Below the pieces are notes generated by a model that was given only the letters and a program-made list of their open reading frames with translations, made no database searches and was not told the DNA's origin. This document shows, piece by piece, positions 816 to 55,067 of a DNA stretch of 64,000 nucleotides (within the stretch, counting starts at the first letter, position 1; each line of letters begins with the position of its first letter). The stretch spans positions 25,234,001-25,298,000 of the forward strand of contig NC_043018.1 of assembly GCF_006345805.1 (NCBI RefSeq), written 5' to 3'. Made by a program: the position numbers and the translations under genes. This stretch comes from Octopus sinensis (Eukaryota).

Positions 816-1689
816 AGGAAATTGGCGTTGACATTTTCCACGGGCTAAACCATTCTTTTTGTGTCGAGACAGAGAGAACATAAGATGAAATTAACTTCTT
901 TCGTTGAAGTTTGACAAAAGAATTATTAGCAGGCAACATTAACTATCATGTTAATCCTTATCATCTTTTATTACACCTGAACTTACCTGTTGTTATCAAC
1001 TTACCTGTTGTTATCAACACTAGCTGACTGATTTCCTTTCTCAATTGTTTTGTTTCAACAATCATTCTGTTAATTTATTTGTAAATATGTATTGGTGCAT
1101 AGAAAGAAAAAAAACAAATATAATATATATACATATGTGTGTGTGTGTATATATAATATAATATATATATGTAACATAATATATATATATTATAATTATT
1201 GTATATTATATAATTATTATATAATATATTTGGCACTACTCGTCTCTTCATTGATATATCAATCTCAGAACAAAGTTTGCCTTTCAATAAACATCATCAT
1301 TAAAGTACATTTTAAACATTCATATTCAGTCTTTACTACCACTCAAAAATGACCAATATAGAGCATATTATTATTATTATTATTGGCAGTATTGTTAACG
1401 CATCAGTCAATACTTTAGAGTATTTAGTGTTATGCTTCTTTTTTTTTTTCTTTTCTTTTAACATTTTGTATTCAAATCTTGTTGTGGTTAACTTTGCCTT
1501 TCCCCTTGATCAAATGAAGTACCACTCAAGTACTGAGGCTGATGATATCGACTAACCCCGACCCCCACCATCCCTTTGATCTTGCTGGCATTGTGTCTAA
1601 ATTAGAAAAATAATAATCTTCATCATGATCATCATCATCATTATTATTAATATTATTATAGCCTGTTCTGCCATGAAGTTTTCTGTTTT

Positions 1690-50731: not shown

Positions 50732-51909
50732 GTAAGATTGTAATTGTTATTTTCGCTGTCCCTTCTCAAATGTATCAACAGGTTTGGTTTAGAGTTAATT
50801 TTAAATTTCACTTTTCTTATAATTGTAGAACCATTTAGACATAATTTTTAATAATGATGATGATTATAATCCGTTCTGCTATAGGCATAAGGCCTGAAAT
50901 TTGGTGGGGAGAGGGTAAGTCAATCATATTAAACCCCCTACCGGTGGTCAACTGGCACTTATTTTATCGACCCCAAAAGGATGAAAGGCAAAGTCAATCT
51001 CGGCGGAATTTGAACTCGGAACATAAAGATGGACAAAATACCGCTAAGCATTTCGCCCAGCATGTTAACAATTCTGCTAGCTCGCCAATTCTTTCTACTG
51101 AGATTTTTGGAGGGTGAGCAAGTTGACTGCATCAACCCCAGTGCTCAACTGCTATTCATTTTATCGACCTTGGTGGAATTTGAACTCAGAAAAAAAATGC
51201 TGTCTGATGTGTTAATGATTCTGCCAGTTTCCCACCTGGCACAAAGTCCAAAATTTTGTGAGAAGGGGTCAGTTGATCACATTGACCCCAGTATATGACT
51301 GGTACCTATTTTATCGACATCGAGAGAATGGAAGGCAAAGTTGGCCTGGGGATGTGGGCTCAGTATGCCATGAGTCAAGAAATGCCTCTAAGCACTTTGT
51401 CCGACCTTTCAAGTGTTGGGCCTCACAGAGGCAAAGTGGCTGAAGTCCTTTTGAGTGTTGGGCCTCACAGAGGCAAAGTTCCTTTCTAGTGTTGGGCCTC
51501 AGGGAGGCAAAGTGGCTGAGTTCCTATTTGATTTCTGAATAGAAGCAAATAGGAAATAACACTTACTGACCAAAGACAAAATGAAAATTAAAATTTTGTT
51601 ATTAGTAATAATAATAATAATAATGGATTTATCCTGTACTACAAGATAAATTTTCCCTTTTCCTTTTCATCCTCATTATCTAGGACTGTGCTAAGACACG
51701 GGCACACTGCGCAAGTTACTCCGGTTCCCCTCTTTCCCTGGGTCTAAGGGAATTTTGATCTACATATACTGTGGCTTGCTGTCAATAAATATATACTACA
51801 GGGTCCAGTACGTTAATTTGCCTATAATGATCCTAAGAGGGTCCTATCATTTACCACCATCACCACCTTCATCGTCAACGCTATCATCATGTTCAATGTT
51901 GTATTTCAG

Positions 51910-52051
51910 ACTACATAGTGAGACTGTGAATCAACAGAGGGAGTATGACCACTTGAGGAAACAGTGGGAGCAGAAAATCTTGCAGTTGAAGCATCTTCAA
52001 CAAAAACACAGCAAAAACAAGTCTAAATTAGCCAAACCTACATTAAAATGA
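51910..52051 (+). CDS. CCDC172: CCDC172-like terminal exon 7 (G-LHSETVNQQREYDHLRKQWEQKILQLKHLQQKHSKNKSKLAKPTLK*)
   Basis: Acceptor gttgtatttcag, phase 2, TGA at 52049-52051. A short SINE-tail remnant (gcagtgctccagca..actgaaacaagtaaaag) follows immediately. Confidence 0.8.
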
Positions 52052-52141
52052 ATGCAGTGCTCCAGCAAATTACTGAAACAAGTAAAAGAATGAAAGAATA
52101 TCTAATTTATTTATTGTACTTCCTCTATATCTCATATATAG

Positions 52142-52173
<32 letters not shown>

Positions 52174-52186
52174 GTGTGTGTGTGTT

Positions 52187-52214
<28 letters not shown>

Positions 52215-52217
<3 letters not shown>

Positions 52218-52377
52218 GCTTTATTAAAAAGCAGCAAAAATATCCCAAAAACTGCTACTCAGTCTCATGTTCCTGTTGGTCGGACAGTTTTGATTCTAAA
52301 CAAAACTGTCCGATGAACGGGAACGTGAAACTCTAACAGTTTCTGTGATATTTTTTGCTGCTTTTTAATAAAGCATA
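52215..52377. mobile_element. Inverted pair of Penelope-like terminal fragments forming a ~160 bp palindrome
   Basis: Arms tatgctttattaaaaagcagc.../...gctgctttttaataaagcata. Central stem tcggacagttttg/caaaactgtccga with 8-nt loop. Adjacent to (TA)n. A related decayed arm lies at ~25545-25612. Confidence 0.6.
52303..52342 (+). ncRNA. Minimal type-I hammerhead-ribozyme-like motif (U4C variant) in a PLE-like remnant
   Basis: Stem I AAACUGU/ACAGUUU, core CCGAUGA, stem II ACG-GGAA-CGU, GAAA, CUC, UA cleavage site after 52335. Confidence 0.6.
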
Positions 52378-55067
52378 TTACTCTACCTCTGGTATTTAAG
52401 TAGTATTTTTCCCCACCTTGTTTCGCATTTATGTGCTTACTCTGGTATACATATATATAATATACCATACTTTTATTGACTTTTTGTTTCCTCCTCACAT
52501 AAGCCAAAAAACACTCTGGAAGACACACACCTTTAATGCAAGTCTGATGAAGTGCTACTCTAATGTCTAAAACCACAAATATTACGTAAATTTTCACTTT
52601 GAACTTTTGCATAAACTGACATTGAAAGCAGAGTTGGTACAGAAACAATTGTAATTAATTATTAAAGGTGTCTTCAAGTATTTCTTTGCCTTACTATTTG
52701 AATTATATCAGCCGTAAAAATCCAGCCAAAACAGTTACAGGAGTTTGGTGCAGGCTCCTGTCAAACTGTCCCACCCATGCCAGTATAGAAGGTGGACATT
52801 AAACGATGTTGATGACGATTACTGGAGTGTACCTATACCTCATCTATAATGGATAAATCAATAAATTAATCAATTGTTTTGGATATAATGTTAGGTGTTT
52901 GATTTAACTAATAATCTTTACAAACTATAGGCATAAAGCCTGAAATTTTGAGAGAAGGGGTCAGTCGATTATTTCAACCCTGGTACTCAACTGGTACCTA
53001 TTTCATCCACCCTAAGAGGATGAAATGCACAGTGGACCTTGGTGGAATTTGAACTTGATTTTACTAATAATGCTATGCTACAGAAATTAAGGCGAGTCTG
53101 AGTGGTAAGAAGTTTGCATCCCAACCACATGGTTCCAAGTTCAGTCCCACTGTGAAGTACTATGGACAAGTGACTTCCATAGCCCCAGGCCAAGCAAAGC
53201 CTTGTGAGTGAAGTTGTTAGACAGAAACTGGAAGAAGCTTGTCGTGAGAGTGTGTCCATAACTTAGTGATATGGTAAGAGAGATCAACAGAATTACTGGG
53301 TTCAATTTTTTTATTTTACTAACCACTTCAAAGAAGTGCCCCATCATGACCACAGTCTGATACAAGTGAAAGGTTAAACACATCATTCTGTTGCCCACAA
53401 ATCAATATTCCCTTTCTTGGCCACCAAGACCCAAAACGTTGGAGGATTCACAAAAATAAGAAGCATCAAATTTTGGTATCAGACCATTTGAGGGGAAGGG
53501 CAAGTCAATTACATCAACCCTCAGTACTTGACTGGTATTTATTTCATTCGCTGCAAAGGATTGATAGTCAAAATCAGCCACACTGGAATTTGAACTCCAA
53601 ATGTCACATTCTGGCCTTCAATCACCTCCAATGCCTCCTCCACTCTCAAAAGATCTTTGTCTTGCAAAATACTCGGTGACCCTACCAGTGCTGGTGCCAT
53701 TTAAAAAGTATCCAATCCACAGTGTAAAGTGGTTGGCATCTGGAAGGGTATTATCATCATCATTGTTTAATGTCCGTTTTCCATGCTAGCACGGGTTGGA
53801 TGGTTCGAGCGGGGTCTGGGAAGCCAGGAGGCTGCATCAAGCTCCAGTCTGATCTGGCAGTGTTTCTACAGCTGGATGCCCTAAAAAAAAAAAACAATGC
53901 CAAAACTGACCTTGCCTGTACTGGAGCACTGTAAAAATCACTGTCCACTCTGTGAAGTGGTTGGTGTGAGGAAGGGCACCCAGCCATAAAAAAAAACCAT
54001 GCCAAAACAGACAGTGAAGCCTGGTACAGTCAAACCGTCCAATCCATGCCAGCATGGAAAGTGGATGTTTAATGATGATGATGGATGTATCACAGAAGAT
54101 ATGCCACTAAGCATTTGTTTCTGATGTGTTAATGATTCTCTAAGCTCAGCGTATTAATAATAATAATAATAATAATTATTATTATTATCCTTTCAACTGT
54201 AGATGCAAGGTCTGAAATTTCGGGGGAGGGGTGGTAGATTACATTGACCCCAGTGGTTCTTATTTTATTGGCCTCAAAAAGCTGAAAGGCAAAGTTGACC
54301 CCAAGAGCATTTGAAACCGGACAGTAAGAAGAAAAACTAAGTATTTTTATCCCCTACGATGATAATAATAATAATGAGCCTAAGTTTGAAATATTGTGGA
54401 GTAGTGGTTCTCAACCGTTCCTACTTCACTTAACCTCCACGTAAAAAGAAAAATAAATCCTATTATATTTTTGGTAATTAGATATTATTAGGAATTTGCA
54501 TAAAAAGAAATTGCTAAAATATTTTGTCTATTGTAGATACATAACCAATTTATTGCTCGGATCCCAGTTGAGGACCTTGACTTTAGGATAAATTAAATCT
54601 GTTCAAGGGACACAACTGTTGTCGCTATCAAGGGAAGTAACTTATGCCTCAAGGGAGATAACATTGCTAGCTAAAAAAAAAAAAAAAAAATTGCTGAGCT
54701 GACATTTTCAAGTAACTAATCTTTCTTTTTCAAGTCCCAGGATTACATTCAATGTCTGCCTGTCTCCTATTTAACATATACAGGCTCTAGTGGCTCCAGA
54801 ACAGGGCAGTAAAAGATTATACGATATGAAGTATCAAAATTTTAAATATCGTTCACATTAAATTTTTATGGATCTCTTATTATTATTATGCTGAATAACT
54901 TTTACTTGTTTCAGCCATGCTTGAAATTTTTAGTGAAATAAATCGACACCAGTATTTATTTTTTTAAGCCTAACACTTATTCCACTGGTCTGTTTTGCTG
55001 AACTGCTAAGTTATGGGGATGTAAACACACTAACACCAGTTGTCAAGCAGTGGTTGGGGACATCTTT

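What the first reader, a model, noticed from the sequence alone, without database searches (positions are those of the whole stretch)
52215..52377. Sense-oriented hammerhead ribozyme motif in the CCDC172-like 3'UTR, masked by its own inverted copy
Seen: 52303-52342 (+) reads AAACUGU-CCGAUGA-ACG[GGAA]CGU-GAAA-CUC-UA^ACAGUUU. This is a complete minimal type-I hammerhead layout (7-bp stem I, GNRA-capped stem II, predicted cut after 52335) about 250 nt past the stop codon and just before AATAAA (52367). The upstream arm (52215-52292) is a decayed reverse complement that can pair with it in a ~78-bp hairpin, which would also sequester the AATAAA. Established: Penelope-like elements carry minimal hammerheads; U4C is tolerated in a natural viroid hammerhead; 3'UTR hammerheads exist in rodent Clec2 genes; coleoids edit dsRNA heavily. 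Inference: a possible switch in which hairpin pairing or ADAR editing gates mRNA self-cleavage or polyadenylation. Caveats: stem III is a non-palindromic CUC loop, so activity may be low, and an ATTAAA at 52223 could end the mRNA upstream.
Basis: partly seen in the sequence, partly recalled or inferred. Interest (0 to 1): 0.85.

Follow-up and report, generated by a model that had tools for sequence, protein, structure and literature searches.

The report
Hammerhead look-alike in octopus fold-back repeat
The hammerhead-like motif and its inverted partner are one old, damaged copy of a mobile repeat present in thousands of copies in this octopus genome, which happened to land in a gene's 3' untranslated region. 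Nothing shows that it is a self-cutting RNA switch.

Summary
A hammerhead-shaped motif lies at 52303-52342 (+), 252 nt after the stop codon. It forms one arm of a 163-nt hairpin (52215-52377, -92 kcal/mol).

The hairpin is not gene-specific. It is one ~85%-identical copy of a repeat family with at least 2,000 copies. Each copy sits in a (TA)n microsatellite as two inverted partial copies plus a ~70-nt tail on one side. That layout is described for Penelope-like retroelements (PLEs). Earlier notes of this scan reported the same kind of element elsewhere in this genome.

The motif, the AATAAA and the ATTAAA all come from the family consensus.
- The founders carry C4 (not U4) and A10.1-U11.1 (not G-C).
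- U4 copies occur at the rate expected from CpG decay.
- No Rfam hammerhead model matches, even for a copy with a canonical core.
- The window copy has also lost 4 nt of helix III.
- In the hairpin, the hammerhead fold costs about 36 kcal/mol.
- Motifs of this quality arise by chance about 0.04-0.2 times per window.

RNA contigs show the 3'UTR runs through the element to about 53150. No cleavage, editing or 3' ends could be seen. Verdict: an ordinary transposon insertion. The family motif may be a degenerate PLE-type hammerhead.

The parts
51909..52051 (+). Last coding exon of the host gene. It encodes a coiled-coil C-terminus and ends with stop codon TGA at 52049-52051.
   Evidence: The open frame from 51911 runs to the stop. 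RNA contigs of 1117, 823 and 194 nt begin to fit exactly at 51909 with no differences. The CCDC172 identity was not verified; only generic coiled-coil look-alikes were found.
52052..53148 (+). The 3'UTR (minimum extent), which contains the fold-back element and other high-copy repeats.
   Evidence: In one search, the X16 contig runs to at least 52125. Contigs at 52368-52443 and 52414-53148 differ from the window at only one position each, at depth 15-23. Intron bins have depth 0-7, and depth falls after about 53256. Contigs cannot show 3' ends.
52140..52214 (.). Compound (CT)n(TA)n(GT)n(TA)n microsatellite. This is the left part of the (TA)n insertion target.
   Evidence: In the fetched family copies (TA)n typically flanks the element, on both sides where the flank is visible.
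52215..52292 (-). Left arm: an inverted partial copy of the repeat unit. Its own hammerhead-like motif, on the minus strand, is destroyed.
   Evidence: Row L001:1534-1577:- of alignment A1 shows G8 changed to C, GAAA changed to GAGA, decayed stem II and a 2-nt deletion. My descriptor finds no hit on the minus strand.
52293..52302 (.). Turning point of the fold-back.
   Evidence: The turning point differs between family copies.
52303..52342 (+). Hammerhead-like three-way junction of the right arm. It has a C4 core and an A10.1-U11.1 pair, and helix III is reduced by a 4-nt deletion.
   Evidence: No Rfam hammerhead match.
52298..52377 (+). Right arm: the sense copy of the unit's 3' part, ending in the family's terminal TTTTTAATAAAG. 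This holds the AATAAA at 52367.
52378..52447 (+). One-sided ~70-nt tail of the family, present only on this side of the hairpin.
   Evidence: The tail is shared by all 24 fetched copies. RNA depth is very high there, with family-type differences at 52397-52405.
52448..52470 (.). TA-rich remnant of the target microsatellite on the right side.

Best explanation
Positions 52215-52447 are one old copy (about 15% diverged) of a short non-coding mobile element. The element inserts into (TA)n microsatellites as two inverted, 5'-truncated copies of a unit of about 150 nt, plus a tail on one side. This is the insertion style described for Penelope-like retroelements. This copy landed in the sense orientation in the 3'UTR of a coiled-coil protein gene.

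Each unit carries a three-helix junction shaped like a minimal type-I hammerhead, about 40 nt before its 3' end. I think the family motif is more likely than not (about 55%) a degenerate descendant of a PLE-type hammerhead. The alternatives are a reverse-transcriptase recognition fold or a chance resemblance.

The family founders carry C4 and A10.1-U11.1. The window copy has also lost most of helix III. In the mRNA the motif is locked in a hairpin of about 78 bp whose other strand is made first. So the window copy most likely does not cleave and is not a switch.

Its plausible effects on the host mRNA are the generic ones of a long 3'UTR hairpin: a double-stranded RNA target for editing, and extra poly(A) signals.

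Shown: family membership, architecture, core states, fold energetics and transcription through the element. Inferred: retro-origin through PLE machinery, hammerhead ancestry and lack of activity.
For: Family membership:
- One search gave 2191 first-look candidates. All 40 scored copies match the whole 163 nt at 80-87% identity.
- all 24 fetched copies share the tail on one side only, and the aligned copies sit between (TA)n runs (TA-rich consensus on both sides).
- the turning point varies between copies (L002, L017, L022, L051). There are single-arm copies (L053, L063) and single full units of 148 nt without a tail (L060, L072).

Literature match: Craig et al. 2021 (PMC8557442) describe for PLEs an inverted 5'-truncated copy, a tail at one end only and a (TA)n bias. 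They also report Naiads in Octopus spp. lacking canonical hammerheads.

The motif is a family property:
- The consensus of alignment A1 has all three helices, with helix III of 3 bp.
- In the genome, the exact 27-mer with C4 occurs 1185 times and with T4 108 times.
- Among 100 listed rows, position 4 is C 87 / T 10, while the neighbouring CpG at position 7 shows T in 8. The T4 copies therefore fit ordinary CpG decay.

Against activity:
- No Rfam hammerhead hit for the window copy or for the canonical-core copy L048.
- The same genome's true PLE hammerheads are found by Rfam and by my descriptor.
- Fold energetics: the isolated motif folds at -9 kcal/mol, the hairpin at -92. The hammerhead conformer has P of about 4e-26.
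- The 48 arms show no covariation (88.0% paired against 88.0% in shuffles), so the copies decay neutrally.

Positional parallel: the canonical PLE hammerhead family also has its motif about 50-60 nt before a (TA)n-adjacent 3' end. It also occurs as outward-facing inverted pairs (L028) and as tandems (L030/L031).

Transcription through the element.
Against: - No reverse transcriptase or autonomous partner was linked to the family.
- There is no significant sequence similarity to the canonical PLE-hammerhead family of this genome (p = 0.06).
- A palindromic DNA transposon with central deletions is not fully excluded.
- Activity was not measured. U4C reduces but does not abolish cleavage in a viroid (PMC3088659), and PLE minimal hammerheads act as dimers, so a weak family-level activity cannot be ruled out.
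- The RNA evidence is from assembled contigs only. It cannot show 3' ends, cleavage products or rare edited variants.
Confidence: 0.82

Rival explanations
1. The motif is a working, if weak, hammerhead in the mRNA. Its cleavage, or the use of AATAAA, is gated by pairing with the upstream arm or by ADAR editing of the hairpin.
For: The motif is on the sense strand of a transcribed 3'UTR. The isolated 46-nt segment does form stems I and II in its minimum-energy fold. U4C is tolerated in a viroid in vivo (PMC3088659).
Against: - All parts come from the repeat family.
- The core is non-canonical at two conserved places.
- Helix III was lost through a 4-nt deletion and has no palindrome for dimer rescue.
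- There is no second sense copy in the window to dimerise with.
- The hammerhead conformer is 36 kcal/mol worse than the hairpin, and the competing arm is transcribed first.
- There is no Rfam match.
- Depth downstream of the motif is similar to depth over the hairpin.
Confidence: 0.03
2. The family's three-way junction has no hammerhead ancestry. It is either the RNA fold that the mobilising reverse transcriptase recognises near the 3' end, or a chance resemblance. The window copy is then simply a dead transposon copy.
For: - All founders have C4 and A10.1-U11.1.
- G10.1-C11.1 is a hallmark of PLE minimal hammerheads (PMC4209133).
- The proportions are reversed: helix I is long (8 bp) and helix II short (3 bp), whereas PLE minimal hammerheads have a long helix II.
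- Unit-length RNAs (L060, L072) and the consensus arm do not adopt the junction as their minimum-energy fold.
- There is no Rfam hit even with U4.
- Naiad PLEs, which target (TA)n and occur in octopus, lack hammerheads (PMC8557442).
- An earlier scan note (s1-105584) proposes such a start-site junction for similar elements.
Against: A motif of consensus quality (at most 1 core mismatch, stem I at least 7 bp, stem III at least 3 bp) arose once in 52 Mb of random sequence. Here it sits in exactly the kind of element, position and outward orientation where PLE hammerheads occur. Helix III is a near-palindrome (ACTC-N-GAGT), as in dimer-forming PLE hammerheads.
Confidence: 0.4
3. The element is a palindromic DNA transposon (a MITE with TA target duplication), not a retroelement. 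The variable centres are later deletions.
For: The element is a near-perfect palindrome with a TA-rich target.
Against: - The ~70-nt tail on one side makes the ends asymmetric, so there are no terminal inverted repeats at the true boundaries.
- There are single-arm copies with variable 5' ends but a constant 3' end, and full single units of 148 nt.
- A poly(A) signal sits at the unit's 3' end.
Confidence: 0.08

Closest known systems
Minimal type-I hammerheads of Penelope-like elements (Cervera and de la Pena 2014, PMC4209133)
   Same: Both are type-I layouts with a short, near-palindromic helix III suited to dimers. Both are carried by a retroelement-like repeat, found as outward-facing inverted pairs and in thousands of dispersed copies. 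Activity as a single motif is low or absent.
   Different: The founders here have C4 instead of U4 and A10.1-U11.1 instead of the highly conserved G-C. Helix II is short (3 bp) and helix I long (8 bp), the reverse of PLE minimal hammerheads. No covariation between families was seen and there is no Rfam match. The window copy lacks helix III.
PLE insertion architecture (Craig et al. 2021, PMC8557442)
   Same: An inverted 5'-truncated copy forms a fold-back, an extension is present at one end only, and insertion goes into (TA)n so that target duplications are hidden. Naiads are present in Octopus spp. and lack canonical hammerheads.
   Different: The element is only about 150-250 bp, non-coding, and has no demonstrated link to a PLE reverse transcriptase. 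The tail is about 70 nt rather than 30-40 bp.
Metazoan non-LTR retrozymes (Cervera and de la Pena 2020, PMC7229834)
   Same: Both are small non-autonomous repeats of 150-400 nt with a type-I hammerhead-like motif.
   Different: Retrozymes are tandem, same-strand arrays that yield circular RNAs through active canonical hammerheads. Here the copies are dispersed, inverted and non-canonical.
Discontinuous hammerhead in rodent Clec2 3'UTRs (Martick et al. 2008; from my own knowledge, not read here)
   Same: Both are hammerhead-type sequences in the 3'UTR of a protein-coding mRNA.
   Different: The Clec2 ribozyme has a canonical core, is conserved between orthologues and is shown to cleave. None of that holds here.
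Transposon-derived long hairpins in 3'UTRs as double-stranded RNA substrates
   Same: A perfect-stem hairpin of about 78 bp made by an inverted repeat of a mobile element, inside a transcribed UTR.
   Different: Editing was not observable in the contig-only data.

Membership tests
Hammerhead ribozyme (type I) | Conserved core C3 U4 G5 A6 N7 G8 A9 | tested here: not met
   The window copy and the family consensus read C-C-G-A-N-G-A. C4 appears in 87 of 100 sampled arms.
Hammerhead ribozyme (type I) | G12 A13 A14, the A15.1-U16.1 pair, and H17 at the cleavage site | tested here: met
   GAAA ... TA is present in the window copy and in the consensus.
Hammerhead ribozyme (type I) | G10.1-C11.1 closing pair of helix II. 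It is the most conserved pair besides 15.1-16.1 (PMC3088659). | tested here: not met
   The pair is A-U in the window copy and in 39 of 45 distinct arms.
Hammerhead ribozyme (type I) | Three helices around the core | tested here: inconclusive
   Helix I (7 bp) and helix II (3 bp) form in the isolated segment. In the window copy helix III is one A-U pair over a 3-nt loop, while the consensus has 3 bp. In context the hairpin wins by 36 kcal/mol.
Hammerhead ribozyme (type I) | Match to a curated covariance model (Rfam RF00163 and relatives) | tested here: not met
   There is no hit at the gathering score. There is none at E<=10 for the window copy or for the canonical-core copy L048. The same model finds 8 sites over its cut-off elsewhere in the genome.
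Hammerhead ribozyme (type I) | Site-specific self-cleavage | not testable with these tools
   Only assembled contigs were available, so no RNA ends are visible.
PLE minimal hammerhead (Cervera 2014) | Palindromic 15.2-16.2 and loop 3, allowing a dimeric helix III | tested here: inconclusive
   The family consensus ACTC-N-GAGT is an interrupted palindrome, and cofolding predicts 4+4 bp in trans. The window copy has lost it.
PLE minimal hammerhead (Cervera 2014) | [quoted passage not shown] | tested here: not met
   In 48 arms, paired cells are 88.0% against 88.0% in shuffles, and the covariation score is 0.061 against 0.058. Subfamily founders share identical core and helix II. More distant families could not be fetched.
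PLE-type retroelement insertion | Inverted 5'-truncated copy with a variable junction, an extension at one end only, and a (TA)n target | tested here: met
   compared with the description in PMC8557442.
PLE-type retroelement insertion | Sequence link to a PLE reverse transcriptase / GIY-YIG element (shared 3' end) | not tested
There is no similarity to the canonical PLE-hammerhead family's 3' region.
MITE (DNA transposon derivative) | Terminal inverted repeats at the true element ends and a fixed target duplication | tested here: not met
   The ends are asymmetric because of the one-sided tail. Single-arm and 5'-variable copies exist. Target duplication is unreadable inside (TA)n.

The most novel reading that the evidence does not exclude
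The family's junction is a naturally attenuated hammerhead (C4, A10.1-U11.1) used in dimeric form by a (TA)n-targeting retroelement that depends on PLE machinery. CpG deamination of C4 then turns dead copies into canonical-core hammerheads. At least 108 arms in this genome carry CTGANGA with an intact helix II, and some lie inside mRNAs. Ordinary mutational decay would thus seed potentially active ribozymes across octopus transcripts. The window copy itself would still be inactive.
Probability: 0.12. Interest if true: 0.55.

Novelty: new member of a known kind. Interest (0 to 1): 0.22.

Why it matters
This is mainly a correction. A striking 'ribozyme switch in a 3'UTR' turns out to be a standard copy of an abundant octopus fold-back repeat. 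Similar motifs elsewhere in this genome should be judged at the family level, not one locus at a time.

The family itself has modest interest for two reasons.
- It puts thousands of near-perfect hairpins of about 80 bp, each with poly(A) signals at both ends, into octopus DNA and transcripts. That is relevant to the double-stranded RNA load that cephalopod editing acts on.
- Its junction may be a degenerate Penelope-type hammerhead whose C4 sits in a CpG, which is an unusual route to canonical cores.

Tried and rejected
- Rfam at the gathering score on the whole window, and at E<=10 on 52100-52500 and on the canonical-core copy L048. These gave only sub-threshold generic hairpin/miRNA matches (best 58 bits against 140 needed), so no miRNA claim is made.
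- SINE reading (tRNA-like head, (TA)n tail). I dropped it: there are no A/B boxes, (TA)n lies on both sides, and the 5' ends and fold-backs vary.
- A subfamily with U4 founders. T4-selected loci looked like distinct subfamilies. Unbiased tallies show T4 at the same rate as T at the neighbouring CpG. In the older CACAACTGT group, CTG 28 / CCA 18 / CCG 31, with T4 linked to T7, fits an old T7 subfamily with near-saturated CpG decay. No firm U4 founder was found.
- Sequence homology between this family's 3' part and the canonical PLE-hammerhead family. It is not significant.
- One pattern search had the wrong spacing and returned only chance hits.
More distant families could therefore not be aligned.
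- The gene name. A feature search with the 46-aa exon peptide gave only generic coiled-coil clusters below 0.9, so 'CCDC172-like' is unverified.
- Editing. No A>G differences were listed inside 52226-52396. Contigs drop rare variants, so this is no evidence of absence.
- The joints 51191>52924 and 52090>52924 in RNA contigs lack GT..AG ends and start in high-copy repeats. I read them as assembly chimeras, not splicing.

Full report
OBSERVATION

The reported letters are all present.
- Stem I is AAACTGT at 52303-52309 paired with ACAGTTT at 52336-52342.
- The core box reads CCGATGA.
- Helix II is ACG-GGAA-CGT, followed by GAAA, CTC and TA.
- AATAAA is at 52367 and ATTAAA at 52223.

The upstream arm 52215-52292 is the reverse complement of the downstream arm. 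The outer 26 nt are 100% complementary and the inner parts 83-86%. The whole stretch folds as a single hairpin of -92.1 kcal/mol, z = -19. The coding frame from 51911 ends with TGA at 52049-52051, so the motif starts 252 nt after the stop. A hammerhead descriptor that I wrote finds this site as the only hit in the window on either strand. The descriptor asks for core C-U-G-A-N-G-A, GAAA, U-H, at most one core mismatch, stem I of at least 5 bp, stem II of at least 3 bp and stem III of at least 1 bp.

IS IT MORE THAN CHANCE?

On its own, no.
- Dinucleotide-preserving shuffles of the window give 0.21 such hits per window, or 0.04 if stem I must be at least 7 bp.
- In 52 Mb of random sequence with the window's composition, the rates per Mb and strand are as follows:
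  - 2.1 for at most one core mismatch;
  - 0.31 if stem I is also at least 7 bp;
  - 0.02 if stem III is also at least 3 bp;
  - 0.06 for no core mismatch.
- A 2.7-Gb genome should therefore hold thousands of sites of the window copy's quality.
- No Rfam hammerhead family matches at the gathering score, or at E<=10 in a 401-nt search.

WHAT IT IS

The 163-nt hairpin is a repeat. A search of the window's own genome (2.72 Gb) gave 2191 first-look candidates. All 40 that were scored match the full length at 80-87% identity.

The 24 fetched copies share one architecture:
- a (TA)n run;
- a fold-back made of two inverted copies of the same sequence;
- a conserved tail of about 70 nt on one side only (window 52378-52447);
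- (TA)n again.

Other features of the family:
- The turning point of the fold-back differs between copies (L002, L017, L022 and L051).
- Some copies have a single arm with a variable 5' end and the constant 3' end (L053, L063).
- Two copies are single full units of 148 nt without a tail (L060, L072).

Notes from earlier agents of this scan (s1-105163, s1-105672, s1-110444, s1-107093) pointed me to Penelope-like elements (PLEs). I checked that lead against Craig et al. 2021 (PMC8557442). They describe, for PLEs, an inverted 5'-truncated copy next to the main copy, a short extension at one end only and a strong (TA)n insertion bias. They also report Naiad PLEs in Octopus spp. that lack canonical hammerheads. 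The family here fits that description.

The element's sense strand (right arm plus tail) is the window's + strand, the same as the host gene. The ATTAAA at 52223 and the AATAAA at 52367 are the two copies of the unit's terminal TTTTTAATAAAG.

THE HAMMERHEAD-LIKE MOTIF IS A FAMILY FEATURE

The consensus of 48 arms (alignment A1) has stem I of 8 bp, the box C-C-G-A-C-G-A, helix II of 3 bp with a GGAA loop, and GAAA. Its helix III is A-C-T / A-G-T around a 3-nt loop; the segment ACTC-N-GAGT is an interrupted palindrome. The cleavage-site TA follows.

The window's right arm has lost 4 nt of helix III (row L001:1588-1629:+ in A1). Its left arm is ruined on the minus strand: G8 is changed to C, GAAA to GAGA, helix II has decayed, and 2 nt are deleted.

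The founders carry C4.
- The exact 27-mer with C4 occurs 1185 times in the genome, and with T4 108 times.
- In 100 rows sampled with position 4 left free, it is C 87, T 10, A 2 and G 1. The neighbouring CpG at position 7 shows T in 8 rows.
- C4 lies in a CpG, so the T4 copies look like ordinary deamination products.
- Loci selected for T4 seemed at first to form subfamilies. In most of them only one arm has T4 and the other keeps C4.
- In the older CACAACTGT group the tally is CCG 31, CTG 28 and CCA 18, with T4 tightly linked to T7. That fits an old T7 subfamily with nearly saturated CpG decay. A U4 founder is neither shown nor fully excluded.
- The 10.1-11.1 pair is A-U in the window copy and in 39 of 45 distinct arms.

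According to Perreault et al. 2011 (PMC3088659), the core is exceptionally conserved. U4C lowers activity considerably in vitro, though a viroid carrying it stays infectious. The 10.1-11.1 pair is the most conserved pair after 15.1-16.1. Cervera and de la Pena 2014 (PMC4209133) list four marks of true PLE minimal hammerheads:
- a conserved G10.1-C11.1;
- palindromic 15.2-16.2 and loop 3;
- abundant covariation.

They also note that single motifs do not cleave in vitro.

Here only the palindrome criterion is partly met, and only at family level. Even a copy with a fully canonical box and all three helices (L048) gets no Rfam hammerhead hit at E<=10. The same genome does hold genuine PLE minimal hammerheads in another family. 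Rfam RF00163 finds 8 sites over its cut-off. My descriptor recovers them as a positive control.

The 48 arms show no covariation. Paired cells are 88.0% against 88.0% in shuffles, and the covariation score is 0.061 against 0.058. The copies decay neutrally.

COULD THE FAMILY MOTIF STILL DERIVE FROM A HAMMERHEAD?

I think this is slightly more likely than not.
- A consensus-quality motif is rare by chance (once in 52 Mb).
- It sits in the kind of element, position and orientation where PLE hammerheads are found.
- In the canonical family of this genome the hammerhead lies about 50-60 nt before a (TA)n-adjacent 3' end. It occurs as an outward-facing inverted pair (L028) and as tandems 431 nt apart (L030/L031).
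- Here the motif lies about 40 nt before the unit's 3' end and faces outward in both arms.

Against ancestry:
- There is no significant sequence similarity between the two families.
- The helix proportions are reversed (long helix I, short helix II).
- Unit-length RNAs do not adopt the junction as their minimum-energy fold.

An alternative raised in note s1-105584 is a three-helix fold that marks where the reverse transcriptase starts. I could not test that.

THE WINDOW COPY IN ITS mRNA

Runs X16 and X17 behave as RNA of the same species. Only assembled contigs were available.
- Contigs of 1117 and 823 nt begin to fit exactly at the splice acceptor 51909, with no differences.
- The X16 contig runs through the stop to at least 52125 and on into the microsatellite.
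- Further near-identical contigs cover 52368-52443 (depth about 20) and 52414-53148 (735 nt, depth 15; 624 nt in X17, depth 16).
- Intron bins have depth 0-7, and depth drops after about 53256.
- Bins over the hairpin have depth 22-33, with no listed differences.

So the 3'UTR is at least 1.1 kb long and runs through the element. Contigs cannot show 3' ends, cleavage ends or rare edited forms. No A>G change is listed inside the hairpin.

The drop from depth about 70 (coding contig) to about 20 could reflect any of three things: use of the element's ATTAAA, poor assembly across the microsatellite and hairpin, or contig averaging. I cannot tell which.

Energetically, the isolated 52300-52345 segment keeps stems I and II at -9.0 kcal/mol. 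In the full context, forcing those stems costs about 36 kcal/mol, giving an equilibrium share of about 4e-26. The competing arm is transcribed first. There is no second sense copy in the window to form a dimer. A switch driven by editing would have to overcome this energy, which a few I-U pairs cannot do.

VERDICT

The interpretation as a gene-specific self-cleavage or polyadenylation switch is not supported. What is there is an ordinary, old insertion of a fold-back retroelement of PLE style in a 3'UTR. It carries a degenerate, doubly non-canonical hammerhead-like junction inherited from its family.

The same kind of element was already noted by this scan on other DNA of this genome. The identity of the host gene as CCDC172-like remains unverified.

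Noticed in passing
L028 (G000:C5:30248804-30251849), about locus positions 776, 960, 1506 and 1690: One PLE-type fold-back carries two different canonical-core hammerhead motifs per arm. One is the common GTACCTGAAGAG... type. The second, about 184 nt further out, begins CCACCTGAAGATTG. They are arranged as an outward-facing inverted pair.
   Followed up: partly
L030/L031 (G000:C16:25146363-25146839): Two identical canonical PLE minimal hammerheads lie on the same strand 431 nt apart, flanked by (TA)n and (GA)n. This tandem arrangement would allow dimeric cleavage.
   Followed up: no
L060 and L072 (around locus positions 1400-1560, minus strand): Single, apparently full-length 148-nt units of the family sit between (TA)n runs, without an inverted partner and without the tail. 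They are useful for defining the unit's 5' end.
   Followed up: partly
window 52034-52127, 51000-51190, 53068-53255 and 53726-53800: These stretches have very high depth in the RNA-run contigs (up to about 700,000 in X7). Other high-copy repeats therefore lie in and around this 3'UTR, including directly after the stop codon. Several contig joints that start there look like assembly chimeras.
   Followed up: no
genome-wide: At least 108 arms of the family carry the canonical box CTGANGA with an intact helix II. About 28% of arms in an older CACAACTGT subfamily read CTG at core positions 3-5, mostly as CTGATGA. These arose by deamination of the CpG that holds C4.
   Followed up: partly
window 52140-52214: A compound (CT)n(TA)n(GT)n(TA)n microsatellite lies directly upstream of the element. 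RNA contigs break there.
   Followed up: no
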